From IMG/VR virus record IMGVR_UViG_3300028394_002328, positions 1-64,000 of that record: a DNA stretch of 64,000 nt; one strand, 5' to 3'. Below the pieces are notes generated by a model. That model made no database searches and was not told where the DNA came from. It was given only the letters and a program-made list of their open reading frames with translations. Within the stretch, counting starts at the first letter, position 1; every line of letters starts with the position of its first letter. Shown here in pieces: positions 4,001 through 60,800 of the stretch. The translations under genes were made by a program, and so were the position numbers.

Positions 4001-4827
4001 TGTCTACTACATTGTCTGCTGCAAAAAATAATATATCACCTCAGTTAAGTTTGCAAGGTGCTACTGCGGGAATACAAGGAATAGCCGGCGGCGTGACAAA
4101 TGCAATAGCATCTAGTCCAATTGGAAAATTAGCATCTGCTATAGGTGGTACAGGATTGTCTAGTTTAACAGGCGGCGCCACTAGTGTTGCTAGTGCAGTA
4201 GGATTAAGTAATCCTGCATCAGCATTATCTACTGTGGCTAGTCTTGCCGGCACAGCAGCAGCATTTAGTAATCCTCTAACAGCATTAACAGCAGGCATAC
4301 CCGGCGGATTAACTGGAGGTATACCTGATATTGCTGGTCAACTCGGTGGTGCATTAGACAAGCTTAAATCAGGTTCTAGTAGTCTTTCATCATTGGCACT
4401 AAGTGGCCTACCCCCGGGTGCTGCGGCTGAGATAAATGCAGCAATGTCATCACTTGCGTCAGTTGGTGCTTCTCCTGTTAAACTCCCAACAGTAGCATCA
4501 AACACTTTTGATAGAAGTGAAATTACCGCACAAATAGGTTCACTATTAGGTGATCCAAAAATACCTAAACCAAACTTTACCGGCGAAATTCCAAGTGCAG
4601 CAAAAGCAGCACTACAAGCAGCGCAGGAAAAAGTTACAAAATCTACTATGGTAAGTTCAGAGGTAGCTACACTTTCTATAGACTTAAAACAAGCTCAATC
4701 ACAATTAGAAGCGGCCGAACAATCATTACCACCAGGCGATCCTCAACTAGAAACTACTAAAGAAAAGGTACTAGATTTAGTTGCTAAACTTGAAGCCAAG
4801 AGCCAAGAGCTATCTTCGTTGACATAA
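1084..4827 (+). CDS. Baseplate central spike, T4 gp5/VgrG-like, with long Ala/Gly/Ser-rich C-terminal extension
   Basis: N-terminal OB-fold motifs 'GVVKNNIDPTRSGRLQVYI' and 'PPDLGTTVICIFINGD'; 'GHSIVLDD...GHQILMSD' and beta-helix-like 'VNIRTQGDLNLHADNNININA'; located immediately before the gp25-like gene. Confidence 0.8.
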   Translation: MENGFKPLGPTKSSKPNSGGGVTREVPVLGVVKNNIDPTRSGRLQVYISDLGDDNPDESESWVTVSYMTPFYGFVTPKAPTEGFGDYKANPSSYGMWYSPPDLGTTVICIFINGDPNYGYWIGCVPKPEALYMVPAIGASQNIIANTEGEAEGYGGATRLPVTNINTNNESISDTADFLTQPKPVHSYSAMILNQQGLIRDPVRGAISSSAQRESPSRVGWGVSTPGRPIYDGGYDDATIVDAATSGAADEGLVVVARRGGHSIVLDDGDILGQDQLIRIRSAAGHQILMSDDAQTLFIIHSNGQSYIELGKEGTIDMYSTNSVNIRTQGDLNLHADNNININAKKKLNIKAEDINIESEKTTSQKVGTNNSVYTMGTFTHKVDGAMSMAAGGEGSYASGGVMYVNGDKVNLNTGATSTTPQVVPAIPILAQTDTLYDSSKGYVAAPGKLQTIVSRAPAHSPWANAGQGVDVKTSSSASSELPPAPSPAVEATNTAAAASTTAAPATPATIATVPPVTAASGTMDSNTTGAMVSASATTVAEGPASRAIQAGAGVVSSSQGPVAAVGALAQTPAQLESAGILKPGSATLVNSLVQGGSNVQAAMTNNLFTGVPGAENLKALTSNIPAQVNAKVTTFQQAQTALTGAGVITGKESPVATAGLIMAGASAGVGATLNTMSSLVSSSTINSLGKTLGAAANLSNALGAGGSAKALLSTSSAITSTLKAGNLAAGLAQTVSGGLGSIAEASKALNQLQGLNNAIISASRGPAAQAFGAILGTLKPLKVGIPQNLFSIARNALKTADAVSKGDLIKSATGALSTIGAIGGPGTSKITGALSGTVNAIGVLSSATTPAAAFRGLTGIIGGIGSVGSATGNKNVSQISKQVNSALSGANRILQAGTQLSKATDIAGSLNATANAVRGASQLNTALGGISALASGISNLPGGQKSISSVVNKSANSLTAALPAALAVGALVSTTLSAAKNNISPQLSLQGATAGIQGIAGGVTNAIASSPIGKLASAIGGTGLSSLTGGATSVASAVGLSNPASALSTVASLAGTAAAFSNPLTALTAGIPGGLTGGIPDIAGQLGGALDKLKSGSSSLSSLALSGLPPGAAAEINAAMSSLASVGASPVKLPTVASNTFDRSEITAQIGSLLGDPKIPKPNFTGEIPSAAKAALQAAQEKVTKSTMVSSEVATLSIDLKQAQSQLEAAEQSLPPGDPQLETTKEKVLDLVAKLEAKSQELSSLT

Positions 4828-4830
4828 ATA
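4823..4830 (+). promoter_or_regulatory. Putative late promoter (CATAAATA)
   Basis: T4-like TATAAATA variant overlapping the upstream stop codon, 4 nt before ATG 4835. Confidence 0.45.
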
Positions 4831-4834
4831 CATT

Positions 4835-5284
4835 ATGCCACAATATATAGGATTCAGCACTTTAGGTGCCAATTTACCTAAAACTACTAATGCCCCTACC
4901 GGCAATGATGGCGGAACAGGTAATATTGTTCGGCAAAATACTGTAGGTAAAAAGTTTAGACTAGTAGACGAACCTTTAGTAATACAAGATTTTGTAAACG
5001 CATTAAATATTAGGCAAGGACAAAAAGTAGGTCAGCCTGGATATGGAACTACTCTTTGGTCATTTATTTTTGAACCCAATACTAATGATACACAATTTAA
5101 ATTACAGACTGAAATCCAACGTGTGGCTAGTTTAGACCCTAGACTAATAGTAAACAGTGTGATAGCTTTCCCGCAAGAGCTTGGTATATTAATTGAAGTT
5201 GAAATAGCAGTGGCCCCGTTCAATGAAGCTCAAGTTCTTAGTTTATTTGCAGATACCAATCTTTCGCAGATTTTAATTCAATAA
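4835..5284 (+). CDS. gp25: Baseplate wedge subunit, gp25-like
   Basis: 'NALNIRQGQKVGQPGYGTTLWSFIFEP...IQRVASLDPRL' fits the GPW/gp25 pattern; synteny gp5-gp25-gp6. Confidence 0.88.
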   Translation: MPQYIGFSTLGANLPKTTNAPTGNDGGTGNIVRQNTVGKKFRLVDEPLVIQDFVNALNIRQGQKVGQPGYGTTLWSFIFEPNTNDTQFKLQTEIQRVASLDPRLIVNSVIAFPQELGILIEVEIAVAPFNEAQVLSLFADTNLSQILIQ

Positions 5285-5311
5285 TTCTTAAAAACCCGAG
5301 GTTTTAGGTAT

Positions 5312-5319
5312 GATAAATA
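5312..5319 (+). promoter_or_regulatory. Putative late promoter (GATAAATA)
   Basis: Intergenic motif upstream of the gp6-like gene. Confidence 0.55.
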
Positions 5320-5336
5320 CTTAAAAGAGAAAACAT

Positions 5337-8300
5337 ATGGCTACCAGCTCACGGCAATCAGCATTATTTGGAGTAAATGATTGGCAAGCAATTTACCAAA
5401 CATTTAGAGAAGCAGACTTTCGTAGTTATGACTATGAAACTTTGCGTAAAAGCTTTATTGACTATTTGCGTCTATACTACCCTGAAACTTTTAACGACTA
5501 TATTGAAAGTTCAGAATTCATTGCTCTATTAGACGTTGTTGCTTTTATGGGGCAAGGTCTTGCGTTCCGCAATGACTTAAATACCCGTGAAAATTTTATT
5601 GATACAGCAGAACGCAGAGATAGCGTTATCAAGTTAGCCAATTTGGTTAGCTATAATCCAAAGCGCAATTTAGCCGGACAGGGTTTTCTAAAAGTTATAA
5701 GCATACAAACTACACAGAACATCAACGACCTTAATGGAATCAATTTAGGAAATCTTCCTATACTATGGAATGACCCTGCTAACCCAAATTGGTTAGAACA
5801 ATTCAACACAATTATAAATGCAGCATTAGTTAATACTCAAAGAGTAGGTCGCCCGGGTAACGTAGCAGACTTGTTGGGTGTACTTACAAGTGAATACGCA
5901 TTAAAAATTCCTCAGGATACCTTGCCAATCGTGCCATTCACTAGCACGATAGATGGTATTACTATGAATTTTGAATTAGTAAGTGTTACCAGTGTAGATG
6001 AAGATTATGTTTACGAAATACCACCTGCACCAACAGGTACATTTAATATGGTATATCGTAATGACAAGTTAGGCTATGGTAGTCCTAACACCGGATATTT
6101 CTTTTATTTTAAGCAAGGGACATTACAAAATTACGATTTTATATTAGAACAACAAATTTCTAATCAAGTTGTTAACATTGGGGATATCCAAGGTGTTAAT
6201 AATACAGACACTTGGTTATATCAATTAAATGAAAACAATGGTACAAGATTAGCTTGGAGAAAAGTAGACAATGTATACGCAGATGCTTACCTTCAAACTG
6301 AAACAAGTCAACGTAAAATCTTTGCGGTAGCTTCTAGATTCAATGACCAAGTAGCATATACGTTCGGCGACGGCGTATTCAGTCAAATACCTGTAGGAAC
6401 TTATAGAGCATATGTTCGTGCAGGGAATGCATTAACATATACTATTGATCCAAATGAAATGCAAGGCATTTCAGTATCATTTAATTATGTTGATAGATTT
6501 GGAAAAACACAAATACTAACGGTAGCATTAGCTCTACAGTTACCTGTATCAAATGCTCAAGTTCGTGAACCATTAGCTCAAATTAAACAAAGAGCTCCTA
6601 CTAGGTATTACACACAGAACCGTATGGTAAATGGTGAAGATTATAATAACTTTCCGTATACCTTATATAGTTCTATTATAAAATCTAAAGCTATCAACAG
6701 AAGTTCAGTAGGTGTAAGTAAAAATTTAGACTTACTTGATCCTACAGGAAAATATTCAAGCATTAATTCATTTGCTACAGATGGCGCAATGTGGCAAGAT
6801 GATGCCAATGGTTATCTATCGTTAACTATAAACAACACCGGTAATATTATTACCTTTTTAACAGACACTCTTGGTTCGGTACTATCAAGCAATAGAACTA
6901 CTCAATACTACACACAAAATTATACTCAATACACTATTAACCAAGCATCTGGAGATGGAGTAGTTTATTGGCAAACTAGTTCAGTGGATGCGAATTCATT
7001 AACTGGATATTTTTACAACTTAGTTTCTAATACTGAAACGTCAATTCCAATTGGTACGTATTCTACTAACAACGTTAAGTATATTACACCTGGTGCATTG
7101 ATTAAATTTGTTGCGCCGAGTGGATATTACTTTGATGCTAATAATCGTCTAGTAGCCGGTATCCCTGGACCAAGCGAACAAACTTTTATTTGGACAACTG
7201 TACTAAGTGTTATCGGTGATGGATATAATAATGGTCAGGGTTCTTTTAGTAATGGATCAGGACCAGTTACATTGAATGGTTATGTTCCAGCTGGAGCACA
7301 AATAACTACTGTACTGCCTGCATTTGACAATTCATTATCTAATGCTATTATCCAAGAATGTATTATTAGAATGGAGTTACAACAAAATTTTAGTCTTGTT
7401 TTTAATAATGCATTGACTATTGCAGAAGATCGCTGGAGTATTAGACAGTATAATGATGCTAATTACTTTATCAATTTTTTAAGTTTAGGTAATACAAGAT
7501 ATACAATAAGTTATAGATCATTAAAGTATTACTTTGGTAGTGTACAAGATACTAGATTTACTTTTGACCGAGACAAGTTAGTTTATGATCCTTTTAGTGG
7601 AAAAATTTTACAAGATTTTGTAAAGGTATTAGCCACTAATACCCAGCCAAGTAATAACTATCCTTTAGCTAAAGATATTCAAGTAAATATTATTGGTCAA
7701 ACAGTTGAGAGTGATGGATATATTAATGATTTTGAAGTTGAAGTTGCTAGTACAGATATTAATAATCGTGGATTAATAATAAATCCTACATTTTTCCAAA
7801 CGGTTACTGGTTATACAACCGGCGGAGCAAATACTGGGATCTATGTATTTTTTGAATTAGTAGAAGATGCAATTAATCTTTCACGCTATCAACTTGTTCC
7901 TAGCTCAGAAGTAGTGCAATATCAAACTAAAACTCAGATTGAAGTTGTAAAATATGATTATCCATTAGGTCAATTATTCTATGCATATGGGGACAACTTA
8001 TTCTATACTTCGGTGCAGGATACTACAGTAACCACTCCATACTACTTACTAGTAGAGCAACCACAATATTCAATCAGACCAGGTAGACAGGGTTTACAGT
8101 TTCAATATAGACATAATAGTAACAATACAACTCGTATTGATCCTGCAACTACCAATATTATTGATTTATATGTAGTTACACAAGCATATTACACTAACTA
8201 TCAAAAATATATTCAAGATACGACGAACACAGTGCCCATGCCACCTAAACCAACTATCAGTGAACTAACGCAGGACTATGGGCAAGTAAATGATTATAAA

Positions 8301-8708
8301 ATGTTAACTGACAGCGTAATATTAAACAGTGTAATATTCAAGCCATTATTTGGACCTAAGGCGGCTGCTAACCTTAGAGGTACTATTAAAGTTATAAAAA
8401 ATAATAACGTAAATGCTAGTAATAGTGAGATTCGTACAGCAGTTCTTACTGCCATGAATGCTTATTTTAATATTAATAATTGGAATTTTGGAGATACTTT
8501 TTACTTCTCTGAATTGAGTGCTTATCTGCATGATCAGGTTGGAGAATTAATTAGTTCTGCTGTATTAGTTCCAAACGATCCTACAATGTCATTTGGCGAT
8601 CTATATGAAATTAAATGTGCGCCATATGAGATTTTCGTCAATGCTGCTACTGCCGATGATGTATTGGTTATTGCAGCGCTCACTCCCGCCGAGTTACAAA
8701 TTAGATAA
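5337..8708 (+). CDS. Baseplate wedge protein, gp6-like
   Basis: 'DYETLRKSFIDYLR...ENFIDTAERRDSVIKLANLVSYNP', 'YTFGDGVFSQIP' and 'QNRMVNGEDY' are typical of gp6/baseplate-J-like proteins. Confidence 0.85.
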   Translation: MATSSRQSALFGVNDWQAIYQTFREADFRSYDYETLRKSFIDYLRLYYPETFNDYIESSEFIALLDVVAFMGQGLAFRNDLNTRENFIDTAERRDSVIKLANLVSYNPKRNLAGQGFLKVISIQTTQNINDLNGINLGNLPILWNDPANPNWLEQFNTIINAALVNTQRVGRPGNVADLLGVLTSEYALKIPQDTLPIVPFTSTIDGITMNFELVSVTSVDEDYVYEIPPAPTGTFNMVYRNDKLGYGSPNTGYFFYFKQGTLQNYDFILEQQISNQVVNIGDIQGVNNTDTWLYQLNENNGTRLAWRKVDNVYADAYLQTETSQRKIFAVASRFNDQVAYTFGDGVFSQIPVGTYRAYVRAGNALTYTIDPNEMQGISVSFNYVDRFGKTQILTVALALQLPVSNAQVREPLAQIKQRAPTRYYTQNRMVNGEDYNNFPYTLYSSIIKSKAINRSSVGVSKNLDLLDPTGKYSSINSFATDGAMWQDDANGYLSLTINNTGNIITFLTDTLGSVLSSNRTTQYYTQNYTQYTINQASGDGVVYWQTSSVDANSLTGYFYNLVSNTETSIPIGTYSTNNVKYITPGALIKFVAPSGYYFDANNRLVAGIPGPSEQTFIWTTVLSVIGDGYNNGQGSFSNGSGPVTLNGYVPAGAQITTVLPAFDNSLSNAIIQECIIRMELQQNFSLVFNNALTIAEDRWSIRQYNDANYFINFLSLGNTRYTISYRSLKYYFGSVQDTRFTFDRDKLVYDPFSGKILQDFVKVLATNTQPSNNYPLAKDIQVNIIGQTVESDGYINDFEVEVASTDINNRGLIINPTFFQTVTGYTTGGANTGIYVFFELVEDAINLSRYQLVPSSEVVQYQTKTQIEVVKYDYPLGQLFYAYGDNLFYTSVQDTTVTTPYYLLVEQPQYSIRPGRQGLQFQYRHNSNNTTRIDPATTNIIDLYVVTQAYYTNYQKYIQDTTNTVPMPPKPTISELTQDYGQVNDYKMLTDSVILNSVIFKPLFGPKAAANLRGTIKVIKNNNVNASNSEIRTAVLTAMNAYFNINNWNFGDTFYFSELSAYLHDQVGELISSAVLVPNDPTMSFGDLYEIKCAPYEIFVNAATADDVLVIAALTPAELQIR

Positions 8709-8716
8709 TTATATAT

Positions 8717-11700
8717 ATGGCAACTAGAATCCGCACCCTAAACTTTCTACCAGAAATATTTCAAACTCCAACTAATGCTCAATTTTTAGCGGCTACTTTG
8801 GACCAACTTGTAGCTCAACCGCTGACTAAAACGATTGAAGGTTATGTAGGTAGTAGGTTTGGATATGGGGTTAATGCCAAAGATTATTATGTAACTGAAC
8901 CAACGAAAGTAAGAACAGATTATCAATTAGATCCAGGTGTAGTATTCACTAAAACTAATCAATCTACAGCACAAGATTTTATTAGTTACCCAGGTATACT
9001 TGATGCTCTTAAACTTGAAGGAGCATTAACTGACAATAATAGTAGACTTTTTAATAGTCAATTTTACTCATGGGATTCGTTTACTAATTTAGATAAGATT
9101 ATTAATTTTAATCAATACTATTGGATTCCTGAAGGCCCTGAACAAGTAGTAGTATCGTCTGATACAGTATTTGCTACTAACGATTACTTAGTAACTGATG
9201 TTATCAATGGGTATAATATTACACCTATTACTTCAACTGAGATAGGAACTACTAACCCAACATTAACATTGTTAAGAGGTGGTACATATACTTTTGCAGT
9301 TAATCAATCAGGTCAATTTTGGATTCAAGGTGCACCTGGTGTAACAGGGTATAGTCCAACTCAACCTAATTTACAAACTAGAGATGTATACGGTGTAGAT
9401 AATAATGGTGCAACTATAGGAACAGTTACATTCACAGTTCCTCCAAAAGACGCTCAAAATAATTATAATTTTCCTGGCAACAACTTAGTTGATGTAGTAA
9501 GCGATATTCCCTTCAATCAAGTCAACGGTGCTAGACTAAGTGATCTAGGTGGTATTGACGGTGTTACTGCGTTAAACGGCTTAACAGTGTTATTTTATAA
9601 TACAGGCATATCTAATGAAATTGGATTTACTTCAAATTTCTTTGACTACACAAATTATGATTACAATAATGATTTAGTAGCTACTGAAACTATTAATGTA
9701 ACCGCAACATCATCGACCGGCAATCTTATTACATGTGATTCAACTAGCAATTTAATAGTTGGAAATTCAATAGTATTCTCAGGAGTCGGTTTTGGTGGAT
9801 TGTCTATCTATTCTGAAACTTTACCTGATACATTATATTTCGTAGAAAGTATTTCAAGTCCTACTGAATTTTCAGTGTCATTATCAGTTGGTGGAGCGCA
9901 AGTACCTTTATCAAATGCTGCAGGTACATTAGTAGGTACAACTAATCAAGGACTGTTAGAAGAAGGTTTTTACACAACTGTTAACCAAAATTTCTATACA
10001 ATAGAATATATAGGAGATTTAACAGATCCTGTAATCAGATTAATACCTAGTTCTCTTATTCCTACTAATCAGAAAATAACAGCAAGTTTTGGTACACAAT
10101 GGATAAGCAGAGTTTTTTATAAAACTGCTTTTGGTATTATAAACATTGTTCCGTTTATAAGTGCCCCATTAGATACTCTATACTATCAAGATGGTACTAG
10201 TGCAAACAAAGTTGGTATAATTCGTATTATTGATAGTAATATAACGAATACGCTAGATGTAGAAACTGATATTTTAGGTCAGCCGCAATTCACTGCAACA
10301 AATGGTGTAGTGTTTACTAATGGATTAAAAGTAGTATTTCAGGGCGATGTAATTCCTGCAAGTTATAAAACTGGCGCATATTATGTTGAGGGCGTTGGTA
10401 GTAGCATAGAATTAATTCCAGTGAGTAATCTTATATCACCGGACCCCTTCACATCAAGTACATATGTACCATGGGATACTACAGCATGGGATATTGGTAA
10501 TTGGGAAGGAACTTCATATATTCCTGTAACTCCTGATTACATTACTATTGCAAGAAATAGTATTGACCGTAATGCTTGGTCAAGAAGTAATAGATGGTTC
10601 CATATTGACGTAATTAATGCTACGGCTGAATATAACAATGATCCTACATTAGTTACATTGTATGCTACATCAGAATATAAGGCTAAACGACCTATAATTG
10701 AATTTTATCCTAACTTGCGGTTATTTAATACCGGCATTGAAGGTAAAGCACCAGTAGACTTCATTGATTTTAGAACAACTGATGCATTTTCCCAAGTTGC
10801 AGGGCAGGAAAATTATTACCCTGATGTAACAGCATATACTGGGTATGACGCAGTTATTGGCACAGTAGCATCAAATACTACTACCACTATAGTTATTCCT
10901 ATTGAAAGTGTTCAGGGTACATTTGAAATAGGGCAATATGTTGCAGACTCTACAAATTTATTGCCTACTAATTCATATATTACCAATATCGTAACCACAA
11001 CTACGACCGTTACTTTAACTATAGAATGGGAATTCTCTACATCATTTACCGGTACTAGCGTAGCATCAGTGATAGGTACTGACACTACTGTAGATAATTA
11101 TGCTCTATTTGATGGATCACGCATAATATTTGCAGCCGATACTGACATAAATGTTAAAAACAAAATTTATGTATCTAGATTTTCTTCTATAAGTGGCTCT
11201 ACTCCAGTTATTACGTTAACTGAAGCAACTGATGGAGAAGTATTAGTTAATCAAGGAACAGTAATATTAAGAGGCTATGTTAATCAAGGTTTTGATTTTT
11301 ATTTTGATGGCTTAGAATGGATTGAGTCGCAAGAGAAAATAACGGTAAATCAACCCCCACTGTTTGATGTATTTGATGATAATGGAATTAGCTTTGGTAA
11401 TACTGATTTATATGTTGGTACTTCTTTCATAGGTAATAAATTATTTGCGTATGGTATTGGTGCAGGCATAAACGACATTGTATTAGGATTTCCAATAAGA
11501 TATAGTTCTGTAGATAATGTGGGTGATATATCATTTGACGTATCATTAAATTTAGATAAATTTAACTATGTGCAAGGTTCAACTCCTATTACGCAAAATG
11601 TTAATACTGGTTATGTGCATCAAGCAGTCAGCCGAACTGAATATATAAGACAAATTGGGTGGCAGACAGCAGTATCACCGAGTATTCAATATCAAATATT

Positions 11701-14700
11701 TGAATTTGAGTATGATGTATTAAATCCCACAACTACATTCACTTGCGATATCGCAATGATGAATACTATAGATACACAATGGCCTACTATTGAAGTTTAT
11801 ATTAATAATATTATACAAGATAATACTACCTATACTGTAACTGTAAATAGTAATTCTACGGTAGTGACTCTAAATGATACGATTATTGATAACACTGTAA
11901 TACAAATATTATTATTAAGTGACCAAGTAAGCAAAACGGCATATTATAGTATACCTATTAATTTAAATAATAATCCTTTTAATCAAGATATAACTGTAGC
12001 TAACGTTGGAGATATTCGCGGGCAATATAGAAGTATGTTCTATAACAACCCAAATACTACAGGACAAGTGTTTGGTTCAAACAACTTTAGAGATTTAGGT
12101 AATTTAGTTCCATGGGGCAACCGCATTATTCAAAATAGTGCATCATTGGTATTGCCTAGCGTATTTTTACGCAAACAAAATCACAATTTGTTTAACTCAT
12201 TATTGTTTAACAGCCGTGAATATATCAAATTTAAAACACTTTTAGTAGACACAGTTAATAATACAGATTATGTTCAACGTTATTCACCATCTGAAATTTT
12301 AGATAATGCACTAGATCAAATTACTTTTAGCAAAACGGATAATCAGCCCTTCTTTTGGAGCGATATGCTACCTAGTAAGGCAGCATATATTACTAACACA
12401 TACACATTTGCTAATAGTTTAGATGTAAGTATATATCCATTAAGTAGAATTTATGATTTTACTTCAGCAAATTATTACGGAGTACTTGTTTACTTAACTA
12501 GGACAGTTAATAATATTACAGTAACTAGACAGTTAATAATTAATCAAGATTACACGGTAAGTACAGATTCGCCGTCGTTGACAATAACTTTAGATTTGTT
12601 GCCCGGTGATATTATTACTATTAAAGAATATAATCAAACATATGGTTCATATGTACCCAATACACCAACTAAGTTGGGATTATACCCTGCATATATTCCT
12701 AGTGTAGCATTAGACATAAATTATTCACAATCTACTTATTTTATATTAGGGCATGATGGTTCGTATAACAAATTATACGGAGATTATTTTCCTGAAACAA
12801 ATATTTTGGTAGATTTTAGAGATCAGGCTCTACTAGAATATGAAACTCGTGTTTATAATAATTTAAAATTAAGTAGTGCTGTACCTGTACAAGAATATGA
12901 AGTATTGCCTGGTTTCTTCAGAGATACTGATTATTCATTTGACGAGTGGTTAGAGATATATAGTCCGGGGTTTTTAAATTGGGTAGGACAAAATCGTTTA
13001 GATTATAAGAGACAGATATATCAAACTAATAACGAATTTACTTACAATTATTGGCAGAGTGGTAACGCAATCAATAGAGAATCTATCTACCAAGGATATT
13101 GGAGAGGTATGTATCAATATTATTACGATACTTCAACTCCGAATACTAGTCCATGGGAGATGTTAGGATTTGTTAATAAGCCAAGTTGGTGGGAAACTAG
13201 ATATGGTCCTGCACCCTATACCAGTGACAACTTAGTATTATGGACAGATTTATCAGAAGGTATAGATTGGAATGATGGTAACCCAGTTGTAATTCCTGCT
13301 GCGGTTAGACCTGAATTGTTGCAAGTGATTCCTGTAGATAGTGAAGGAAATTTATTATCACCGTTAAGAAATATAGTTGGTAACTATAATTCAAACATTT
13401 TCCAACGTGATTGGAAAGTTGGTGATGAGGCTCCAGTTGAATTCAGCTACCGTAGAAGCAGTTCATACCCGTTTGATTTAATGCGTATATTAGCATTAAC
13501 TAAGCCTGCTGAATTCTTCAACCTAGGGGTAGACTTAGACAATTACAAATATAGCGAAGAATTTGGACAATATCTTGTTAATAACAGAAGTCACTTAGTA
13601 ATAAGCAACGTTGAAATTTATGGTTCAGGCACTGCTAAAACTAGTTATATTAACTGGATAATTGATTATGAAAAACAAGTAGGAGTAGATGCTACCGCTA
13701 ATATAACAACACTATTAGATAATTTAGATGTACGGTTAGTGTATCGCCTTGCAGGGTTTAGCGATAAAGCTTTACTAAAATTTTATGTTGAAAAAGGCAC
13801 ACCAAACAGTAGAAACGCATCGTTATTAATTCCTGATGAAAGTTATAGTGTTTTATTATATGATAATCAACCATTTAACCGTGTAATATATAGCGGGGTA
13901 ATAGTACAAATAACACAATACGGGTTTTCAGTATTTGGTAATTCACAAACGCAAACATATTTCAGAACATTAAAACCATATTATAATGGTAAGTATGACC
14001 GTATTACTATAGATAATTTAAATGTTAAAGTGTCACAGGATCACAGTGATGTTGAGGTAATTGTTCCATATAATACCGTGTTTGGTACTGTGCAGGAAGT
14101 AGCAACATTTTTATCTAACTATGGAGCATGGTTAACAAGCTTAGGGGTAACCTTTGAGCAACAAGAAAATGAATTAGAAATTAACTGGAATCAAATGATT
14201 GCCGAGTTCTTATATTGGGCGCAGACTGGTTGGGATGAAGGTAGTATCGTAACATTAAATCCTTCTGCAAGAACAATTTCATTTAATAAAGATAGTAATA
14301 TTGTACAACCATTAACTATTCAGCAAACTAATTTTATTTTAAATCAGAATTTATATCCAATTCAGAATAGAGATTTGGCTATTATTCGTGAAGAAACATT
14401 GTTTACTGCTACCGCATTAAATGATGGTGATACTATTTCTTATGCACAATTTAATATCAGTAATTTTGAACATGGTATTGTTTTTGACAATGTGACATTA
14501 TTCAATGATATAATATATAACCTAATTACTGGATTAAGACAAACTCGTATTACGGTCAGAGGTACTAAGAGTGCAGATTGGAACGGCACAGTTGATGCTC
14601 AAGGATTTATTTATAATCAAGACAATATTAAAGAATGGAACAATACTGTTACCTATACAAAAGGTGAAATAATATTGTACAAAAACAAGTATTGGGTAGC

Positions 14701-27753: not shown

Positions 27754-27765
27754 GATAAATAAATA
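27754..27765 (+). promoter_or_regulatory. Putative late promoter (GATAAATAAATA, two overlapping motifs)
   Basis: Intergenic, directly before ATG 27768. Confidence 0.5.
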
Positions 27766-28540: not shown

Positions 28541-28548
28541 GATAAATA
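28541..28548 (+). promoter_or_regulatory. Putative late promoter (GATAAATA)
   Basis: Intergenic, followed by GGAG RBS and ATG 28573. Confidence 0.55.
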
Positions 28549-39085: not shown

Positions 39086-39087
39086 AA

Positions 39088-43172: not shown

Positions 43173-43891
43173 AAACACTTTATGTATGTGGTGATAGTTT
43201 TTTAACACCCAGTGCATTATATCCCAACACGCATTTTACAGAAATTATTTCAAAAAAATTAGGGTATGATTTAAAAGTATTGGCTCATGGGGGAATGAGT
43301 AATAACGGAATATGTCTTCAAATTGAAGCAGCAATTGCTAATAATGCATCATTTGTAATAGCATCTCCTACCTATTACGATAGAACTGAAATTCCAATAA
43401 TAGACAAATTAACAAATTATAATGCTACCGATTTATTTTATTATGGTAATACTTACAGTAATTATGATAATAAAGTTGATCATTCTCTATTTTCTGACTC
43501 AATTAATTCACTATTATCTGCCGATAATAAGGAAAGGTTTAAAAAAATACCAAATATGATAGAAAAAGTTAACACATTGAAAGATTATCTAGTTAATTTA
43601 TATAATATAAATTGGAAGCAGCAACAAGATATATGGGCTTTATATGCAACATTTCATAAATTGCATATGTCTAATATACCCTATATCATGGTATTAGACA
43701 GAATGAATATCGCATCAGAATTTAATTGGTTAACTGAAAAAAATAATACTTTACCATATGGTGATATTGCACACTTAGTTAACGATGGTACTATTAAAGT
43801 AGATCCTGGGTATCATACATTTCCCGAGGATCAACTTTATATAGCAGATAAAATTTTAGAACATATTGAAAAATTTAATATATTAAATTAA
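43169..43891 (+). CDS. SGNH/GDSL hydrolase-like protein
   Basis: 'VCGDSF', 'GGMSNNGI' and C-terminal 'DPGYHT'. Confidence 0.65.
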   Translation: MKTLYVCGDSFLTPSALYPNTHFTEIISKKLGYDLKVLAHGGMSNNGICLQIEAAIANNASFVIASPTYYDRTEIPIIDKLTNYNATDLFYYGNTYSNYDNKVDHSLFSDSINSLLSADNKERFKKIPNMIEKVNTLKDYLVNLYNINWKQQQDIWALYATFHKLHMSNIPYIMVLDRMNIASEFNWLTEKNNTLPYGDIAHLVNDGTIKVDPGYHTFPEDQLYIADKILEHIEKFNILN

Positions 43892-46344: not shown

Positions 46345-46352
46345 TATTTATA
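46345..46352 (-). promoter_or_regulatory. Putative late promoter, perfect TATAAATA on the minus strand
   Basis: The plus strand reads TATTTATA; the motif ends 7 nt before the minus-strand ATG at 46337. Confidence 0.6.
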
Positions 46353-46368: not shown

Positions 46369-46376
46369 AATAAATA
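46369..46376 (+). promoter_or_regulatory. Putative late promoter (AATAAATA), divergent partner
   Basis: Ends 5 nt before ATG 46382. Confidence 0.5.
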
Positions 46377-48336: not shown

Positions 48337-48350
48337 ACTTAGGAATATTA

Positions 48351-50705: not shown

Positions 50706-50708
50706 TAA

Positions 50709-54482: not shown

Positions 54483-56200
54483 GTAAATGGCGTCGAGGAC
54501 ATGTTGGTAGATTTTGGTATACTGAAGAGGTTAAAAATCTTACATATATTAAACAACCGATAACTCAAGATGAAGTTGACCAATGGGTATCTAAAGGTTA
54601 TGATTACGTAAAGAGCTTTACGGGCAGCATGTATGATAATAAAAACCCAATGCCTGAATTTATTAATAGACTTAAAGATATCTTTTACAACTATAAAAAT
54701 CTTACGTTTACTTTTTATAAAATGAGTACATTGGAAATTATGCCTGAGCATTCTGATCACTATAATACATATATGAAATTATATGGGGCAGATTACAAAA
54801 ATGTACACCGCATCTTATTAATGTTAGAAGATTGGAAACCCGGACATTATTTAGAAATAGATGGCACTGGTATTATTAATTGGGTAGCAGGTGATTACTT
54901 TATTTGGGAAAATGATTGCAAACATGCTGCTGCTAATATAGGTGTAGAAGATAGATATACTTTACAGATTACGGCTGAAATACTTAGCGACAACTCAACT
55001 GACTATAAACTACATTGGTATAATATTCCTGATAGAGAATCAAAAACCGAATCATCTCAATACTATATGAATAGGGTACTAAACGGAGTAACTGATAATA
55101 TAAGAAATGAACCATTGTATATTTACATGCTTAATCAACAAATTGTTGAACTAGAAACAATAATACATGATCAAAGTACAGTACAGTATTTAAATGAAAA
55201 GGGTATTACATTTTATCTAACAGAACCATTATGCGGCTATACAAGATTACCTAGGAAACATACACTATCAATTTATTCAGAATTTAAAGGTGATGAAGAT
55301 TCTTCTGCTTTACGGGCAGACGAGTTAGATAGCATTAAAGAATATGTTATCAGAAATAAATTAACTAATGTTAATGTTTATACATGTGATTATGACGCTA
55401 AAACATATTATCCTTACTATAAATCTTTTATGAATATAGAAACAGATGATTTGTTTATTAGAACCATACCACAAAAAACAGTATTCCATACCAATGTCAA
55501 AGCTGCTTTTAATAAAAAATTTATTTGTTTAAATTGGAGATTTACTCCTCATAGGCAATTATTAGCCGCATACTTGTCTCAAAAATCTAGCACTATTAGT
55601 TGGTATTTTAGGGGAGATTTGCCTGTTGTAGGGCACTATAATTGGATTAGTATTTTTTCACTTAGAGACCCTAAATATTTTAATACTTTAATAGATGGCA
55701 TCACATATCTAAATGCTAACGCACCTCTGAGTGTTGACTTACCTGATGTAGAATCTATCTCTTTATATGATACTGCTCATGGCGAATTTATTCCTAATAG
55801 TCAAATACTGAATAATAGTTCCAATGAGATAATAGAAAATGCTTATTTGAATGTGTTTTGTGATATAGTTACTGAGTCTAGATTCGCTCAGCCAACTGGT
55901 AACTTTAGCGAAAAGGTATTTCACCCTATATGGTATAAAAAGCCTTTCGTATTGGCAGCGCCTCCTCATACACTAAAATATTTAAAAGAAGAAGGGTATA
56001 AAACCTTCAATGAATTTTGGGATGAAAGTTATGATGACTGTGAAAATCATGAAGAAAGATTAATGAAAATATTTGATGTAATAGATTTCATTGATAGTAA
56101 ATCTATAGACGAATTGCGTGAAATGTATGAGCAAATGAAGCCAATACTAAAACATAATTATGATTTAATAAAGCAAAAACTGCCCACAGTAGAAAAGTAA
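54479..56200 (+). CDS. 2OG-Fe(II)/cupin-type oxygenase-like domain fused to a GT10-like domain
   Basis: HxD...H motif ('MPEHSD...KHAAANIG..DRYTLQIT'); C-terminal 'DIVTES...FSEKVFHP...KPFV...DESYD'. Confidence 0.7.
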   Translation: MSKWRRGHVGRFWYTEEVKNLTYIKQPITQDEVDQWVSKGYDYVKSFTGSMYDNKNPMPEFINRLKDIFYNYKNLTFTFYKMSTLEIMPEHSDHYNTYMKLYGADYKNVHRILLMLEDWKPGHYLEIDGTGIINWVAGDYFIWENDCKHAAANIGVEDRYTLQITAEILSDNSTDYKLHWYNIPDRESKTESSQYYMNRVLNGVTDNIRNEPLYIYMLNQQIVELETIIHDQSTVQYLNEKGITFYLTEPLCGYTRLPRKHTLSIYSEFKGDEDSSALRADELDSIKEYVIRNKLTNVNVYTCDYDAKTYYPYYKSFMNIETDDLFIRTIPQKTVFHTNVKAAFNKKFICLNWRFTPHRQLLAAYLSQKSSTISWYFRGDLPVVGHYNWISIFSLRDPKYFNTLIDGITYLNANAPLSVDLPDVESISLYDTAHGEFIPNSQILNNSSNEIIENAYLNVFCDIVTESRFAQPTGNFSEKVFHPIWYKKPFVLAAPPHTLKYLKEEGYKTFNEFWDESYDDCENHEERLMKIFDVIDFIDSKSIDELREMYEQMKPILKHNYDLIKQKLPTVEK

Positions 56201-56203
56201 ATA
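56197..56203 (+). promoter_or_regulatory. Putative late promoter (GTAAATA)
   Basis: Overlaps the upstream stop; followed by AAGGAG RBS and ATG 56222. Confidence 0.45.
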
Positions 56204-56320: not shown

Positions 56321-57798
56321 ACTATATAGGAATATCAGCAGGATTCCATGACGCTGCTATTAGTGTGGTAGACAATTCAGGCGACATACTATTTGCTGGG
56401 CATAGTGAACGGTATAGTAAGAAAAAACATGATAAAGACTTATGCCAAAAGTTACTTACGGACGCATTAAGTTACTGTAATTCAGAATCAATAGAGTATC
56501 ATTACTACGAAAGACCATGGTTAAAAGCACTTAGACAGTTACGTAGTGGTGAGGGTTTTGTTTGGCCAAGTTGGAAAAACTTATTAGGTCCCATCTATAA
56601 TCAAATGGGTAAACCAAAGATACATGTACATGGTCATCATCTATGCCATGCAGCAGCAGGATTTCAAACCAGTCCTTATAGTGACGCCACAGTTGTAATA
56701 ATTGACGCTATAGGTGAGTTTGACACTATGACGATTTGGGATGCTAGATATGACCTTATAACTGGCAAGGCTGCCTATGAGAAACTATGGAGTATGCAAT
56801 ATCCAAACAGTGTTGGCTTGTTCTATTCGGCCATGACTGAGCGAGTCGGATTGCGTCCACTAGATGAAGAATATATTCTTATGGGCATGGCTGCATATGG
56901 TCATCCTCATCATGTTGATAATATGTTTGATGCGTTAATAGATGACGATGACATATTGACCTTTAAACAGAACCTACATGTTGGGGTGAGCAAAGAATTT
57001 TTGAAAGATGCTAAAGAAACAGACATTGCTAGTAGTAGTCAACAGATAGCAGAGTATATGATAACTCTAGTTGTAAGCAAGGCTAAACGTTTAGGTAGAA
57101 GTAGAAATCTAGTATACGGTGGCGGTGTAGCATTGAACTGTTTAGCCAACAGATTATTAGGAAATATATATGAAAATATTTGGATTATGCCGAACCCTGG
57201 TGATGCAGGTAATAGCCTTGGTGCAGCATGTCTTGGCTATGGCACTAAACTTAATTGGAGTAATGCTTTTCTTGGCTATGATATCACTGGGGATTATCCT
57301 GTTCACAGGTTACTTGATAGTTTACTTACTGATAGGATGGTTGGTGTTGCGTCCGGTAGGGCAGAATTTGGACCGAGGGCCTTAGGTAATCGTAGTTTGT
57401 TGGCAGATCCTCGAGGTGATGATATCAAAGATAGAGTAAATGAAATTAAGCGTAGACAAAAGTTTAGACCATTCGCCCCTATCATTCTTGAGGAATATGT
57501 ACATGATTACTTTGACATGCCAAAGTCTTGGGGGAATAGTAGGTATATGCAAGTGATTGCTAACTGTAAATACCCTGATCAATTTCCTGCTATCGCACAT
57601 GCCGACAATACTAGTAGGGTACAAACAGTGCCCAAAGATGGATCGGGTATTAGAGAGTTATTAGAGAAATGGTACGTTATAACTGAATGTCCAATGTTGT
57701 TGAATACTAGTCTGAACATTCGTGGTGAGCCAATGGTCAATGACAGGACCGATGCTGACAGATTTGAAAAACTGTATGGGGTCAAAGTTCTGTCATAA
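56317..57798 (+). CDS. Carbamoyltransferase (NodU/CmcH/TobZ family)
   Basis: 'GFHDAA', 'HHLCHAA', 'DAIGE', 'MGMAAYG', 'GGVALNCLAN', 'EFGPRALGNRS', 'RQKFRPFAP', 'LLNTSLN'. Confidence 0.93.
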   Translation: MNYIGISAGFHDAAISVVDNSGDILFAGHSERYSKKKHDKDLCQKLLTDALSYCNSESIEYHYYERPWLKALRQLRSGEGFVWPSWKNLLGPIYNQMGKPKIHVHGHHLCHAAAGFQTSPYSDATVVIIDAIGEFDTMTIWDARYDLITGKAAYEKLWSMQYPNSVGLFYSAMTERVGLRPLDEEYILMGMAAYGHPHHVDNMFDALIDDDDILTFKQNLHVGVSKEFLKDAKETDIASSSQQIAEYMITLVVSKAKRLGRSRNLVYGGGVALNCLANRLLGNIYENIWIMPNPGDAGNSLGAACLGYGTKLNWSNAFLGYDITGDYPVHRLLDSLLTDRMVGVASGRAEFGPRALGNRSLLADPRGDDIKDRVNEIKRRQKFRPFAPIILEEYVHDYFDMPKSWGNSRYMQVIANCKYPDQFPAIAHADNTSRVQTVPKDGSGIRELLEKWYVITECPMLLNTSLNIRGEPMVNDRTDADRFEKLYGVKVLS

Positions 57799-57809
57799 GT
57801 AATTACATC

Positions 57810-60800
57810 ATGAGAGATGTATTTTATTACGGCGAAAAACCCAACGTTCATCCAAAAGAAAAATTTGCAACTTCAATAGAAGATGCTAGGCGTCAATCAA
57901 CGACAGAACATTTTTGGATAATCAATGAATTCTGTGACTATCGCAATTTTGATTGGGATTTTGATTTTGAATTCCTGCCCGATGAAGATGTATGGGCAGA
58001 AGACCATAACAATGTATGGCCTAGTCAACATCAAAAAGACAGTGGCACTTGGCTATGTTCAAAGAAAAACAGTGATATAATTATCTATCGTGCTGATGTT
58101 GACCCTGTTATTCGTAAGAATATAAAGAACGATCACTGGGTATTATTAGATTTAATTGATGAAAATAAATTTGATTTTAGTTGGCACCCTGATCCAACTG
58201 ATCCTCCTTATAATTATAAATGGGGATGTAAGTTTTTTCCAGTAGAATTACAGGCATGTTTAGAATATCGTATTGATGGTGCGTTCAAAACAAAATACAT
58301 GAAAGAAATTGTAGAATTGTTACCACAGTATGATAGATGGGTAGAAGTACAAGAGATAGATAAATTAGCATTTGATATGTCATGGAGACCCAATCCATTG
58401 GATCCCCCTATGAATTATATATGGGGTAACAAATATATTGATGGTAATCTACGTTCAACTCTAGAATACCGTATACCAGGTGCAATTGATACAAAATACA
58501 TGCCTGATTTAATTTCGGTAGTACCTGAATGGGATAAGTGGGTAGAAGTACAAAAAGTAAATAAGTCTACATTTGATTTTACATGGAGACCTGATCCACG
58601 TGAACCTGCGTATATCTATACTTGGGGTAACAAATATATCGATTCTGAGCTAAGGCCAACACTTGAATACCATTGTGAAGGGGCTACTGAACGCAAGTAT
58701 ATGTCTAATGATGTAGAGGTATTACCTGAATGGGATAAGTGGGAAATACTTCATCCTATAGATAAATCTACATTTAATTTTACATGGAGACCTGACCCTA
58801 GAGAACCAAATTTAAATTATGTATTTGGTAATAATCAGTATGACAGTACAAAAATGCCTACCATTATTTACAAAATGGAAGGTGCTACCGATGAAAAGCA
58901 TATGCCGAGTAATGCTAAATTGTTACCACAGCCTAACAGGTTTCAACATTTAGAAGATAGTTATGGCATAGATTATTCTTGGGTTCCTGATCCTACTAGT
59001 CCTCCTTATATATATGTTTGGGGTAATCAATGGAATAACCCTCAAGATAAAATATCTATTCAATATGTAGTTGAAGGAGCAACAGAATACAATTATATGG
59101 CAGAACGTGCTATTCGTAAGCCATGTAAAGATAATTGGGAAATACCTAACAATGTGGATATTACTGGGTTTGATTTTAGTTGGGAACCTAGTCCAGCAGA
59201 TCAACCTTATATCTATCAATTTGGCACTCAATGGCAAAAGACAGGTGGACCAAGATATCTAACACCTGGCGTACATAAAAATAGTGATGTTAAGTATGTT
59301 GATTTACAAAAAGTAAAAATGTTACCTAGTAAAGATAACTTCATTATCTTAGACAATGTTGTTGTAGATGATTTTGATTATAGTTGGCATTCCGATGAAA
59401 CAGAAGAGCCATACATATATGTATTTGGTAATAATTTATACTCTGCTGAAATTATGCCAACTATTCAGTATGTACCTAAAAATGCAGTCAGAGCAGCATC
59501 AGGCAAATCAATTGGACAAATAAAATATGTCAATGATATTATCGCTACGTTAGGAGAGAATAGAAATAATTGGGTAATTAATCAACCAATAGATGAAACT
59601 AAATTTGATTTTAGTTGGGTACCCAACCCCAAAGACCCAGCTTACATATACCGTTGGGGTAACAAATATATTTCTAATGTATATAAACCAACTATTGAAT
59701 ATATAGTTGAAGGTGCAACTGAAATAAAATACATGGACGACAGTGTTGCTGTATTACCCGAGTTTGATCGTTGGTATATCCCATCTAATATTGATGATAC
59801 TGGTTTTGATTATACATGGAGACCTGATCCACTAGAACCTGTATTAATTTGGCAATTTGGTACACAATGGCAAAAGACGGGCGGACCTAGATATACCATG
59901 CCTGGTGCCATTGAAGTCAAATATGTTAGTATACACAAGGTAAAAGCATTGCCTAATAAAGACAATTGGACTATACCTAAAAATATAGATATATCTAATT
60001 TTGATTTCAGTTGGCATCCTGATGATACTTCACCTCCTTACATATATAGGTTTCCCACTCAGTGGGCAATGAGTGGTGGTCCTATTTACACTGTAGTTGG
60101 AGCAACAGAAGTAAAGTATATAGATACCTTTAGGGCTAAAGCACTACCTAGTATAGATAATTGGGAATTCGATTCTAATAATATTGATTTGTCTAACTTT
60201 GACTTTAGTTGGCATCCATACGCAGAAGACGAGCCGTTCATATACCAATTTGGTACTCAATGGCAAAAGACAGGTGGTCCTAGATATTTAACTCCAGGAG
60301 TTCATAAAAATAGTCCTGTAAAATATATTGATACACGCATTATAAAAGCAAAAAGATTACCTAATAAAAATAATTTTATAATCATTGATAATAATGTAAT
60401 TGACAATTTTGACTACTCATGGCATCCTGATGAAACAGAGGAGCCATTTGTTTATATATTTGGTAACACTCAATATCCAGCCGAGATAATGCCTACAATA
60501 AAATATGTTGTAGAAGGTGCTACTCAAATAAAATATATTAATGATGTAGTTGCTGTACTAGGTGAAAATAAGAAAGTTTGGCATATCCCTGATAATATTG
60601 ATGATAGTTCATTTGATTATACTTGGGTGCCTAATCCCAAGGACCCGCCGTATATATACGAATTTGGTACGCACTGGCAAAAAACTGGTGGTCCAATCTA
60701 TGCTGTTAAAGATGCCACTGAAGTCAAATATATTGATTATCAAAAAGTAACCGCATTGCCTAATAAAGATAATTGGACTATACCTGGTAACGTGGATATA

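What the first reader, a model, noticed from the sequence alone, without database searches (positions are those of the whole stretch)
4823..57810. One TAAATA late-promoter motif heads both structural and enzyme operons
Seen: TAAATA occurs in most non-overlapping gene junctions (4823, 5312, 27754, 28541, 30788, 46345 on minus, 46369, 56197; variant ATAAGTA at 57795). Known: T4-like late promoters are TATAAATA, read with a gp55-type sigma factor. Inference: the enzyme cluster belongs to the morphogenesis programme. Caveat: the hexamer is common in AT-rich DNA.
Basis: partly seen in the sequence, partly recalled or inferred. Interest (0 to 1): 0.6.

Follow-up and report, generated by a model that had tools for sequence, protein, structure and literature searches.

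The report
Late promoter motif of a jumbo phage
The short sequence TAAATA in front of most gene blocks in this uncultured 335-kb phage is very probably its late-gene promoter, of the kind known from T4 and RaK2-like phages; it also heads sugar- and radical-SAM-enzyme operons, and at almost half of the sites genome-wide it lies so close to the start codon that the mRNAs should have no leader.

Summary
In the window, 278 nt of gene junctions hold 8 of the 42 plus-strand TAAATA (Fisher p = 1e-11), although the hexamer is depleted in the window overall (84 found, 169 expected). Across the 335-kb genome TAAATA is the top hexamer upstream of genes: 96 of 208 upstream regions in sense, 28.6 in shuffles. 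No -35 element accompanies it. It heads the terminase, portal, tail-fibre and baseplate genes. A separate TTGACA-N17-TATAAT class heads clusters of small ORFs elsewhere in the genome.

Dozens of IMG/VR relatives keep the motif at the orthologous junctions while the flanking DNA diverges. The gp55-type sigma is missing from this contig only because its left end is cut. The nearest long relative and 19 fetched loci encode it at the RaK2/Atu_ph07 syntenic position. No gp33 or gp45 homologue was found.

The same motif heads the p101/radical-SAM operon, a divergent sugar-enzyme pair and the carbamoyltransferase. So the enzymes are probably co-expressed with virion genes, but timing was not measured. 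Some distant relatives drive the same operon from a sigma-70-type promoter.

New here: spacing to the ATG is bimodal, 4-5 nt without a Shine-Dalgarno sequence or 16-24 nt with one. This predicts many leaderless late mRNAs. RaK2 shows no such class.

The parts
4825..4830 (+). Late-promoter core (CATAAATAC). It overlaps the hub gene's stop codon and lies 4 nt before the ATG of the gp25-like baseplate gene (4835-5284). No Shine-Dalgarno (SD) sequence, so it is a predicted leaderless start.
   Evidence: In about 50 relatives ATAAATA is kept while the upstream coding sequence diverges. It is either 4-5 nt from the same ATG or about 16 nt upstream with an AGGA SD.
5314..5319 (+). Late-promoter core (GATAAATACT), 17 nt before the ATG of the gp6-like wedge gene (5337-8708). 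An AAAGAGA ribosome-binding site lies between them.
   Evidence: The string GATAAATACTTAAAAGAGA is kept in nearly all of more than 50 relatives, with rare single-base changes, while the flanks vary. The gene matches phrog_10646, baseplate wedge.
27756..27765 (+). Two overlapping cores (GATAAATAAATA), 6 and 2 nt before the ATG of a conserved 50-aa ORF (27768-27920). That ORF overlaps the 206-aa gene at 27920-28540.
   Evidence: GATAAATAA followed by 2-5 nt and ATG is conserved in relatives.
28543..28548 (+). Late-promoter core (AGATAAATAA), 24 nt before the ATG of the 408-aa virion-protein-like gene (28573-29799). A CGGAG SD lies between them.
   Evidence: AAGATAAATAA, about 8 nt, then CGGAG is conserved in about 55 relatives, including loci with a different upstream gene. 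PHROG hits to virion structural proteins.
30789..30794 (+). Late-promoter core (TCTAAATACT, the CTAAATA variant), 16 nt before the ATG of p101 (30811). p101 is the first gene of the 13-gene overlapping operon 30811-43891, which holds the radical SAM array.
   Evidence: ATCTAAATACT followed by TAGGAG is nearly invariant in about 55 relatives. In three of them (L142, L146, L155) the SD is lost and the motif sits 3-5 nt from the ATG. In at least 20 relatives this is the only gap of 12 nt or more between p101 and the radical SAM genes.
30811..43891 (+). The p101/radical SAM operon. It holds p101, two paralogous genes of about 265 aa, a 109-aa and a 316-aa gene, five tandem N-terminal-twitch radical SAM paralogues (33967-40365), a sixth radical SAM gene (40350-41327) and three genes of unknown function. 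Starts and stops overlap throughout.
   Evidence: NF033640, 314-365 bits. Sigma-70-like matches in the region are at chance level, 114 against 105.6.
46345..46350 (-). Late-promoter core on the minus strand (ATATAAATAA), 7 nt before the ATG of the epimerase/dehydratase gene. It heads the minus-strand genes 45432-46337, 44231-45439 (sugar C-methyltransferase) and 43888-44238.
   Evidence: The divergent pair of motifs is kept in the few relatives that carry these genes (L165, L166, L168).
46371..46376 (+). Late-promoter core (CAATAAATAA), 5 nt before ATG 46382, so a predicted leaderless start. It heads 46382-56200, which includes a UDP-glucose dehydrogenase fusion, a B12-binding radical SAM gene and others.
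56198..56203 (+). Late-promoter core (AGTAAATACT). It overlaps the upstream stop codon and lies 18 nt before the ATG of a 32-aa micro-ORF (56222-56320), with an AAGGAG SD between them. The micro-ORF overlaps the carbamoyltransferase gene (56317-57798) by ATGA.
   Evidence: The motif is kept only in the closest relatives (L208; L217 has ATAAATACTT). This is the weakest of the TAAATA sites.
57796..57801 (+). Variant core TAAGTA (CATAAGTAAT), 8 nt before ATG 57810 of a protein of more than 2063 aa and unknown function.
   Evidence: [A/C]TAAGTA followed by 4-8 nt and ATG occurs in most of the roughly 55 distinct relatives, including some with unrelated upstream genes. Three have TAAATA instead, and eight have no motif and a TAA/ATG coupling to the carbamoyltransferase.
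3..27751 (+). Virion/baseplate block. It holds the C-terminal part of a structural protein cut by the contig end, the gp5-like hub (1084-4827), a gp25-like gene, the gp6-like wedge and a 6344-aa virion protein (8717-27751).
   Evidence: Same gene order as RaK2 ORF070w-081w.

Best explanation
The TAAATA box (consensus [G/C]ATAAATA[C/A]T; A is preferred but not required before the core) is the -10-type promoter of the phage's late transcription class. It is read by host core RNA polymerase carrying a phage gp55-family sigma, as in T4 and RaK2-like jumbo phages. It needs no -35 element. In the window it starts at least eight transcription units: three virion blocks, the p101/radical SAM operon, a divergent pair of sugar-nucleotide-enzyme operons, the carbamoyltransferase unit and the large gene at 57810. 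The enzyme genes are therefore probably made together with virion proteins, and their likeliest role is a glycan or other modification of late products (inferred). Genome-wide the sites fall into two layouts. In about 45 genes the box is followed 16-24 nt later by the ATG, usually with a GGAG-like ribosome-binding site between them (34 of 45). In about 38 genes the ATG lies 4-5 nt after the box with no ribosome-binding site. T4 late promoters start transcription 6 nt after the box, so in the second layout the A of ATG is at or next to +1 and the mRNA should be leaderless (inferred, not shown).
For: Enrichment and strand bias are. Information content is near zero from -40 to -11, so there is no -35 element. 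Flanking bases separate junction sites from coding copies, with mean scores of +1.23 and -1.74. Ten sampled motif-headed genes outside the window include the large terminase, the portal, tail fibres, and baseplate and virion proteins; in the window they are the hub, gp25-like, wedge and giant virion protein. A distinct TTGACAATAAAT-N11-TATAAT class clusters at 84.6-88.5, 98, 231-250 and 267-281 kb, and none lies in a window junction. Phylogenetic footprints hold at five junctions in 45-55 relatives each. A gp55-family sigma is found in the nearest long relative G001 at 82884-83729 (E = 5e-72) and in 19 other loci. It is followed by a gp47-like gene and is divergent from the baseplate operon, as in RaK2 and Atu_ph07. 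An ATAAATA late motif is reported at 35 sites in CBB and also precedes structural genes in GAP32 (PMC5259590). T4 TATAAATA lies at -13 to -6, and Aeh1 uses CTAAATA (PMC1524935). For the leaderless layout: spacing is bimodal. ATG, but not GTG or TTG, is enriched at 4-5 nt (45 against about 17 expected), and 30 of those 45 open ORFs of at least 50 aa. The two layouts replace each other at the same orthologous ATG. The same peak appears in the relatives.
Against: No transcription start or timing data exist; no RNA run was listed. The window's own contig has no gp55 homologue. This is explained by the cut left end, but it means the sigma of this exact genome is unseen. No gp33 or gp45 homologue was found, so the T4 activation mechanism may not apply. 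Sites 4825 and 56198, and the TAAGTA variant at 57796, share bases with the upstream stop codon. Site 56198 is conserved only in close relatives. For the 4-5 nt class, a box at that distance occupies the place where a ribosome-binding site would sit, so a translational role cannot be excluded from sequence alone.
Confidence: 0.85

Rival explanations
1. At least in the 4-5 nt class, the box acts on the RNA rather than on the DNA. It would be an A/U-rich translation-initiation element replacing the Shine-Dalgarno sequence, for example by binding ribosomal protein S1, or else a processing site. Those genes would then be translated from longer polycistronic transcripts.
For: The box sits where a ribosome-binding site normally lies, and none of the 38 short-spacing sites has a GGAG-like sequence. 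Many of these genes follow another co-directional gene with no detectable terminator.
Against: The same box with the same flanking preferences lies 8-10 nt upstream of a genuine GGAG in 34 of 45 long-spacing sites, where it cannot be the ribosome-binding site. At orthologous genes the box is kept and only the SD-containing spacer comes and goes. Divergent junctions carry one box per strand. The match to the T4, Aeh1 and CBB late promoters and the presence of a gp55-family sigma fit a DNA signal.
Confidence: 0.08
2. The box is a weak -10 element for the host's primary sigma factor. The motif-headed genes would then be transcribed by unmodified host polymerase, with no dedicated late class.
For: TAAATA is A/T-rich and resembles a -10 element. 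This contig shows no phage sigma.
Against: The same genome has textbook TTGACA-N17-TATAAT promoters in front of a different set of genes. Box sites have no -35 or TG extension. The clade does encode a gp55-family sigma. The box heads classic late genes.
Confidence: 0.05
3. The pattern is chance: TAA stop codons followed by A/T-rich spacers in an AT-rich genome.
For: Two of the nine TAAATA sites in the window, and the TAAGTA variant, overlap a TAA stop codon. The genome is 63% A+T.
Against: Dinucleotide shuffles, composition-matched expectations, strand asymmetry and conservation in relatives, including loci with unrelated upstream genes, all reject it.
Confidence: 0.01

Closest known systems
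T4 late promoters (TATAAATA, read by gp55 with gp33 and the gp45 clamp)
   Same: An A/T box containing TAAATA in the -10 position, with no -35 element, in front of virion and packaging genes. A gp55-family sigma is encoded next to a gp47-like gene (PMC1524935).
   Different: The T at the first position is not conserved; G or C precedes ATAAATA. The clade's sigma is about 300 aa, against 185 aa in T4. No gp33 or gp45 homologue was found. Nearly half of the sites are 4-5 nt from the ATG.
ATAAATA late motif of RaK2-like jumbo phages (CBB, GAP32)
   Same: Same heptamer upstream of structural genes. A gp55-like sigma is present and gp33/gp45 are not detectable (PMC5259590). Same synteny of the sigma gene and the baseplate block. 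The wedge protein is 31-33% identical.
   Different: In 50 kb of RaK2 the box lies 26-36 nt from the ATG, always with an SD, and there is no 4-5 nt class. Here the box also heads large enzyme operons.
Aeromonas phage Aeh1 late promoters (CTAAATA)
   Same: C instead of A before TAAATA, as at 30789 in front of p101 (PMC1524935).
   Different: In Aeh1 the C is the rule. Here it is a minority variant, but it is fixed at this one junction across the clade.
Leaderless middle and late mRNAs of Thermus phages (phiYS40, P23-45). This comparison is recalled from memory and was not checked here.
   Same: -10-only phage promoters placed so that transcription starts at the start codon.
   Different: A different phage lineage with different factors. 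No gp55-type sigma is involved there as far as I recall.

Membership tests
T4-type (gp55-dependent) late promoter | Short A/T box related to TATAAATA at the -10 position, with no -35 element | tested here: met
   The consensus is A-TAAATA-[C/A]-T. Information content is near zero from -40 to -11 in 83 sites.
T4-type (gp55-dependent) late promoter | Found upstream of late (virion and packaging) genes, in sense orientation | tested here: met
   Terminase, portal, tail fibres, baseplate hub and wedge, and virion proteins. 96 sense against 31 antisense upstream regions.
T4-type (gp55-dependent) late promoter | gp55-family sigma encoded in this very genome record | tested here: not met
   No hit with T4 gp55, Atu_ph07 gp694, phrog_234, phrog_12791, PF04542, PF04545 or an 8-member HMM. 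The contig starts inside a structural gene, about 3-4 kb short of where the gene lies in G001. The gp46/47 homologues expected next to it are missing too.
T4-type (gp55-dependent) late promoter | gp55-family sigma encoded by the phage clade, at the syntenic site | tested here: met
   G001, whose proteins in the 27.8-32.7 kb block are 87-97% identical to the window's, has a hit at E = 5e-72. Nineteen loci have E = 1e-38 to 1e-43. L016 matches phrog_12791 at 1e-71 and is 37% identical to Atu_ph07 gp694.
T4-type (gp55-dependent) late promoter | gp33 co-activator and gp45 sliding clamp | tested here: not met
   No match to phrog_254, phrog_223 or T4 gp45 in the genome. The 225-aa gene next to the clamp loader is a Bax1-I/YccA-type membrane protein. 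These small, fast-evolving proteins may escape detection, and part of the genome is missing.
T4-type (gp55-dependent) late promoter | Transcription starts about 6 nt downstream of the box, late in infection and dependent on the sigma | not testable with these tools
   No RNA run was listed for the stretch, and the phage is uncultured.
RaK2-like ATAAATA late motif | ATAAATA upstream of structural genes, with an SD-containing leader | tested here: inconclusive
   The heptamer and the gene class match. But 38 of 85 sites have no room for a leader, unlike RaK2, where the distance is 26-36 nt.
Leaderless mRNA start | Start codon at +1, AUG only, no Shine-Dalgarno sequence | tested here: inconclusive
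   The sequence fits. ATG, not GTG or TTG, peaks 4-5 nt after the box. 0 of 38 sites have an SD. 30 of 45 open ORFs of at least 50 aa. The transcription start itself is not mapped.

The most novel reading that the evidence does not exclude
In this abundant freshwater clade of jumbo phages the gp55-type late programme makes leaderless mRNAs on a large scale. About 40% of late promoters are placed so that the A of ATG is the transcription start. The leadered (box, GGAG, ATG) and leaderless (box, 4-5 nt, ATG) states have interconverted repeatedly at orthologous genes. An accessory radical SAM/glycan-enzyme operon has moved between the late and the sigma-70 promoter class in different lineages. 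I found no paper in the searched library that links gp55-type promoters to leaderless mRNAs.
Probability: 0.55. Interest if true: 0.6.

Novelty: new member of a known kind. Interest (0 to 1): 0.42.

Why it matters
The result gives an uncultured but very common phage clade a working transcription map: which junctions are promoters, which genes form operons, and which accessory enzymes are likely made with the virion. More than 590 relatives of the wedge gene were found in IMG/VR. It shows that the T4/RaK2 late-promoter logic reaches this distant branch. It also suggests a testable variant, leaderless late mRNAs, that would change how gene starts and expression are predicted in such genomes. The late-type promoters on radical SAM, sugar-modifying and carbamoyltransferase genes point to a virion or late-product modification pathway worth testing.

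Tried and rejected
- A weak T4 gp55 hit at 291298-292452 (minus strand, E = 5e-4) carries an SGGxDS-type PP-loop motif and has no PHROG or Pfam sigma match. It is spurious.
- The neighbours of the two metallophosphoesterases (251 kb and 304 kb) were checked as possible gp47/gp55 pairs. Neither is one.
- The 225-aa gene upstream of the gp44-like clamp loader was tested as a positional gp45 candidate. It is a Bax1-I/YccA-family membrane protein (PF01027).
- Megablast of 8 kb against cultured phages found nothing.
- The search for RNA sequencing runs listed none.
- Sigma-70-type matches between 27 and 47 kb are at chance level, 114 against 105.6. Intrinsic-terminator-like matches are about twice the shuffle mean (17 against 8.6), but all 17 stems lie inside genes and none marks an operon end.
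- Internal plus-strand TAAATA copies in the radical SAM operon (31019, 33283, 39057, 42062, 42793, 42965) have poor flanking scores. I did not count them as promoters.
- No fold prediction or complex prediction was run, because none was needed for the claim.
Full report
**What the window is.** The window is the first 64 kb of a single 335,035-bp IMG/VR phage contig. The contig is 37% G+C, linear, and estimated to be about 95% complete. Its gp6-like wedge protein is 31-33% identical to those of RaK2-like and Atu_ph07-like jumbo myoviruses. More than 590 IMG/VR contigs encode relatives at 75-88% identity.

The genes in the window run in this order:
- the C-terminal part of a structural protein, cut by the contig end;
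- a gp5-like hub, a gp25-like protein, the wedge and a 6344-aa virion protein;
- four genes at 27.8-30.8 kb, including a 408-aa virion-protein-like gene;
- a 13-gene overlapping operon (30811-43891) with five tandem N-terminal-twitch radical SAM paralogues and a sixth radical SAM gene;
- a minus-strand trio with a sugar C-methyltransferase and an epimerase/dehydratase;
- a plus-strand block with a UDP-glucose dehydrogenase fusion and a B12-binding radical SAM gene;
- a carbamoyltransferase;
- a protein of more than 2063 aa with no family match.

**The observation.** Every listed site is present within 0-2 nt of the stated coordinate. The window has ten junctions with a gap of at least 4 nt. 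Seven carry a correctly oriented TAAATA and one carries TAAGTA. The other two have gaps of only 8-9 nt. The 278 nt of junction zone hold 8 of the 42 plus-strand copies (Fisher p = 1.2e-11), where local composition predicts 1.2. The hexamer is not common here. It is depleted twofold in the window, with 84 copies against 169 +/- 13 in shuffles, as expected for a signal that is avoided where it is not wanted.

**Genome-wide behaviour.**
- With a simple ORF map (362 genes), TAAATA is the most frequent hexamer in upstream regions. It occurs in 96 of 208 in sense and 31 in antisense, against 28.6 in dinucleotide shuffles.
- GATAAATA occurs in 27 upstream regions in sense and 1 in antisense, against 1.5 in shuffles.
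- ATAAATA is 29 times denser in intergenic than in coding DNA.
- Aligned sites show A before the core in about 65% of cases and C/A then T after it. There is no information from -40 to -11, so there is no -35 element.
- Flanking bases alone separate junction copies from coding copies.

A second, clearly different class, TTGACAATAAAT-N11-TATAAT, clusters at 84.6-88.5, 98, 231-250 and 267-281 kb in front of short ORFs and in the tRNA region. No good match of this class lies in a window junction.

**Which genes the box heads.** In the window it heads the gp25-like gene, the wedge and the virion-protein-like gene. Ten further box-headed genes were sampled. They include the large terminase, the portal, two tail-fibre-like proteins, and baseplate and virion proteins. 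This is the classic late set.

**Conservation.** At five junctions I compared 45-55 distinct relatives each.
- Upstream of the wedge, GATAAATACTTAAAAGAGA is kept in nearly all of them while the neighbouring sequence drifts.
- Upstream of the 408-aa gene, AAGATAAATAA, about 8 nt, then CGGAG is kept, even where the upstream gene differs.
- Upstream of p101, ATCTAAATACT plus TAGGAG is nearly invariant.
- Upstream of the gp25-like gene, ATAAATA is kept although the hub's C-terminus is very variable.
- Upstream of the gene at 57810, [A/C]TAAGTA followed by 4-8 nt and ATG is kept in most relatives, including some with unrelated upstream genes. Three relatives have TAAATA instead. Eight have no box and a direct TAA/ATG coupling to the carbamoyltransferase.

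Site 56198 is supported only in the closest relatives.

**The sigma factor.** The contig itself has no detectable gp55, gp47 or gp46 homologue. The reason is positional. In RaK2 and Atu_ph07 the late sigma gene, followed by gp47 and gp46, is divergent from the baseplate operon. The window's first ORF is only the C-terminal 359 aa of a protein of about 750 aa, so the contig ends before that locus.

Nineteen relatives' loci with enough upstream flank hold a gp55-family gene there (E = 1e-38 to 1e-43 against my HMM). The copy in L016 matches phrog_12791 at 1e-71, is 37% identical to the Atu_ph07 late sigma, and is followed by an SbcD/gp47-like gene. The nearest long relative, G001, whose proteins in the 27.8-32.7 kb block are 87-97% identical to the window's, has it at E = 5e-72. 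That is roughly 3-4 kb left of the point that corresponds to window position 1.

No gp33 or gp45 homologue was found. The same is reported for RaK2-like phages (PMC5259590).

**Comparison with known systems.** T4 late promoters are TATAAATA at -13 to -6, the first T is poorly conserved in relatives, and Aeh1 uses CTAAATA (PMC1524935). CBB and GAP32 have an ATAAATA motif in front of structural genes, plus a gp55-like sigma. The element here is therefore a new member of a known kind.

**The enzyme operons.** The p101 operon is headed by the conserved CTAAATACT box. In at least 20 relatives that gap is the only intergenic space between p101 and the radical SAM genes. The divergent junction at 46338-46381 carries one box per strand, and the few relatives with these genes keep that layout. 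The carbamoyltransferase unit and the gene at 57810 follow the same pattern.

Co-expression of the enzymes with virion genes is the best reading. It remains an inference about timing and says nothing direct about function. There is also a caveat. In seven more distant relatives, a 114-115-aa gene at the head of the radical SAM block is preceded by a clean TTGACA-N17-TATAAT plus GGAG instead of the box. Six of the seven proteins align with p101 at 25-26% identity, with E values from 3e-9 to 6e-3; the seventh, L318, gave no hit to p101 and is placed with them by its resemblance to L317 and L320. Neighbouring junctions in the same loci still carry TAAATA. The operon's promoter class has therefore changed during evolution.

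**Two layouts.** The distance from the box to the ATG is bimodal. There are 27 genes at 4-5 nt (38 at 2-8 nt) and about 34 at 16-24 nt.
- None of the short-spacing sites has a GGAG-like sequence, whereas 34 of 45 long-spacing sites do.
- Counting all TAAATA copies, ATG peaks at +4 and +5 (17 and 28, against about 8 elsewhere). GTG and TTG do not peak. 30 of the 45 such ATGs open ORFs of at least 50 aa, against 21% for random ATGs.
- With the T4 geometry, a 5-nt spacer puts the A of ATG at +1.
- At the gp25-like gene and at p101 the two layouts replace each other in different relatives while the same ATG is used.
- The peak recurs in the relatives' loci and is absent from 50 kb of RaK2, where the distances are 26-36 nt.

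The portal, tail-fibre and gp25-like genes, and the plus-strand sugar block at 46382, are in the short-spacing class. I read this as widespread leaderless late mRNAs, with a probability of about 0.55. The main alternative is an RNA-level role of the box in translation.

**Limits.**
- No transcript data could be obtained.
- Gene starts outside the window come from a longest-ATG ORF rule.
- The comparison sets are related sequences, so the counts of relatives are not independent events.
- The functions of the enzymes and of the large protein at 57810 are unknown.

Noticed in passing
window 33967-41327: Five tandem paralogues of the N-terminal-twitch radical SAM family (NF033640, 314-365 bits) are followed by a sixth radical SAM gene. 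They sit inside a gapless 13-gene operon, and relatives of the 37853-39085 paralogue were found in 63 IMG/VR loci. Their substrate is unknown. The neighbouring genes are sugar-nucleotide enzymes.
   Followed up: partly
loci L289, L290, L293, L302, L317, L318, L320 (upstream of the 114-115-aa gene at the head of the radical SAM block): In these more distant relatives that gene, which is p101-like in six of the seven, is headed by TTGACA-N17-TATAAT plus GGAG instead of the late box. Nearby junctions keep TAAATA. This is a swap of promoter class at an orthologous operon.
   Followed up: partly
window 56222-56320: A 32-aa micro-ORF ends in a very conserved basic motif (YRKRIKELRKRDPFIYK) and overlaps the carbamoyltransferase start by ATGA. 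The motif can be read upstream of the carbamoyltransferase in about 35 of the 45 distinct relatives compared. Its function is unknown.
   Followed up: partly
window 27768-27920: A conserved 50-aa ORF lies directly after a double late box and overlaps the next gene by one base at TAATG (the last A of its stop codon is the A of the next ATG). It would be missed with a 60-aa cut-off.
   Followed up: partly
L016:2272-2400, L330:2360-2480 and 14 other relatives (upstream of the gp55-like gene): A third promoter-like class lies in front of the late sigma gene: a GTTGC-N6-GCAAC palindrome plus an extended -10 of the TGnTAnAAT / TGTTACACT type. Similar TGTTACA[A/C]T boxes lie in gaps of the window's own genome near 146.6, 228.0, 235.6 and 305.0 kb. 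They may be middle promoters. The same intergenic region carries back-to-back late boxes on both strands.
   Followed up: partly
window 5291-5306: A short hairpin followed by a T-run lies just upstream of the wedge promoter. In relatives the stem changes on both sides while the pairing is kept. It may be a weak terminator or insulator between the gp25-like and wedge genes.
   Followed up: no
window 1-1082 and G000 contig ends: The contig starts inside a structural gene and lacks the gp55/gp47/gp46 block found in relatives. The record is therefore truncated at its left end, so 'absent' genes may lie in the missing part.
   Followed up: yes
G000:C1:148270-148947 (L266:4270-4947): A Bax1-I/YccA-type integral membrane protein ('FtsH-binding') is encoded immediately upstream of the gp44-like clamp loader.
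   Followed up: partly
G000:C1:290403-292452 (L002): A TctC-family solute-binding protein gene lies next to a 384-aa protein with a PP-loop-like SGGxDS motif. Both are unusual cargo for a phage.
   Followed up: no
window 8717-27751: A single 6344-aa ORF matches the RaK2-type giant virion structural protein family (phrog_10938, E = 3e-260) and is about twice the length of the RaK2 protein. It is separated from the wedge gene by only an 8-nt gap with no box.
   Followed up: partly
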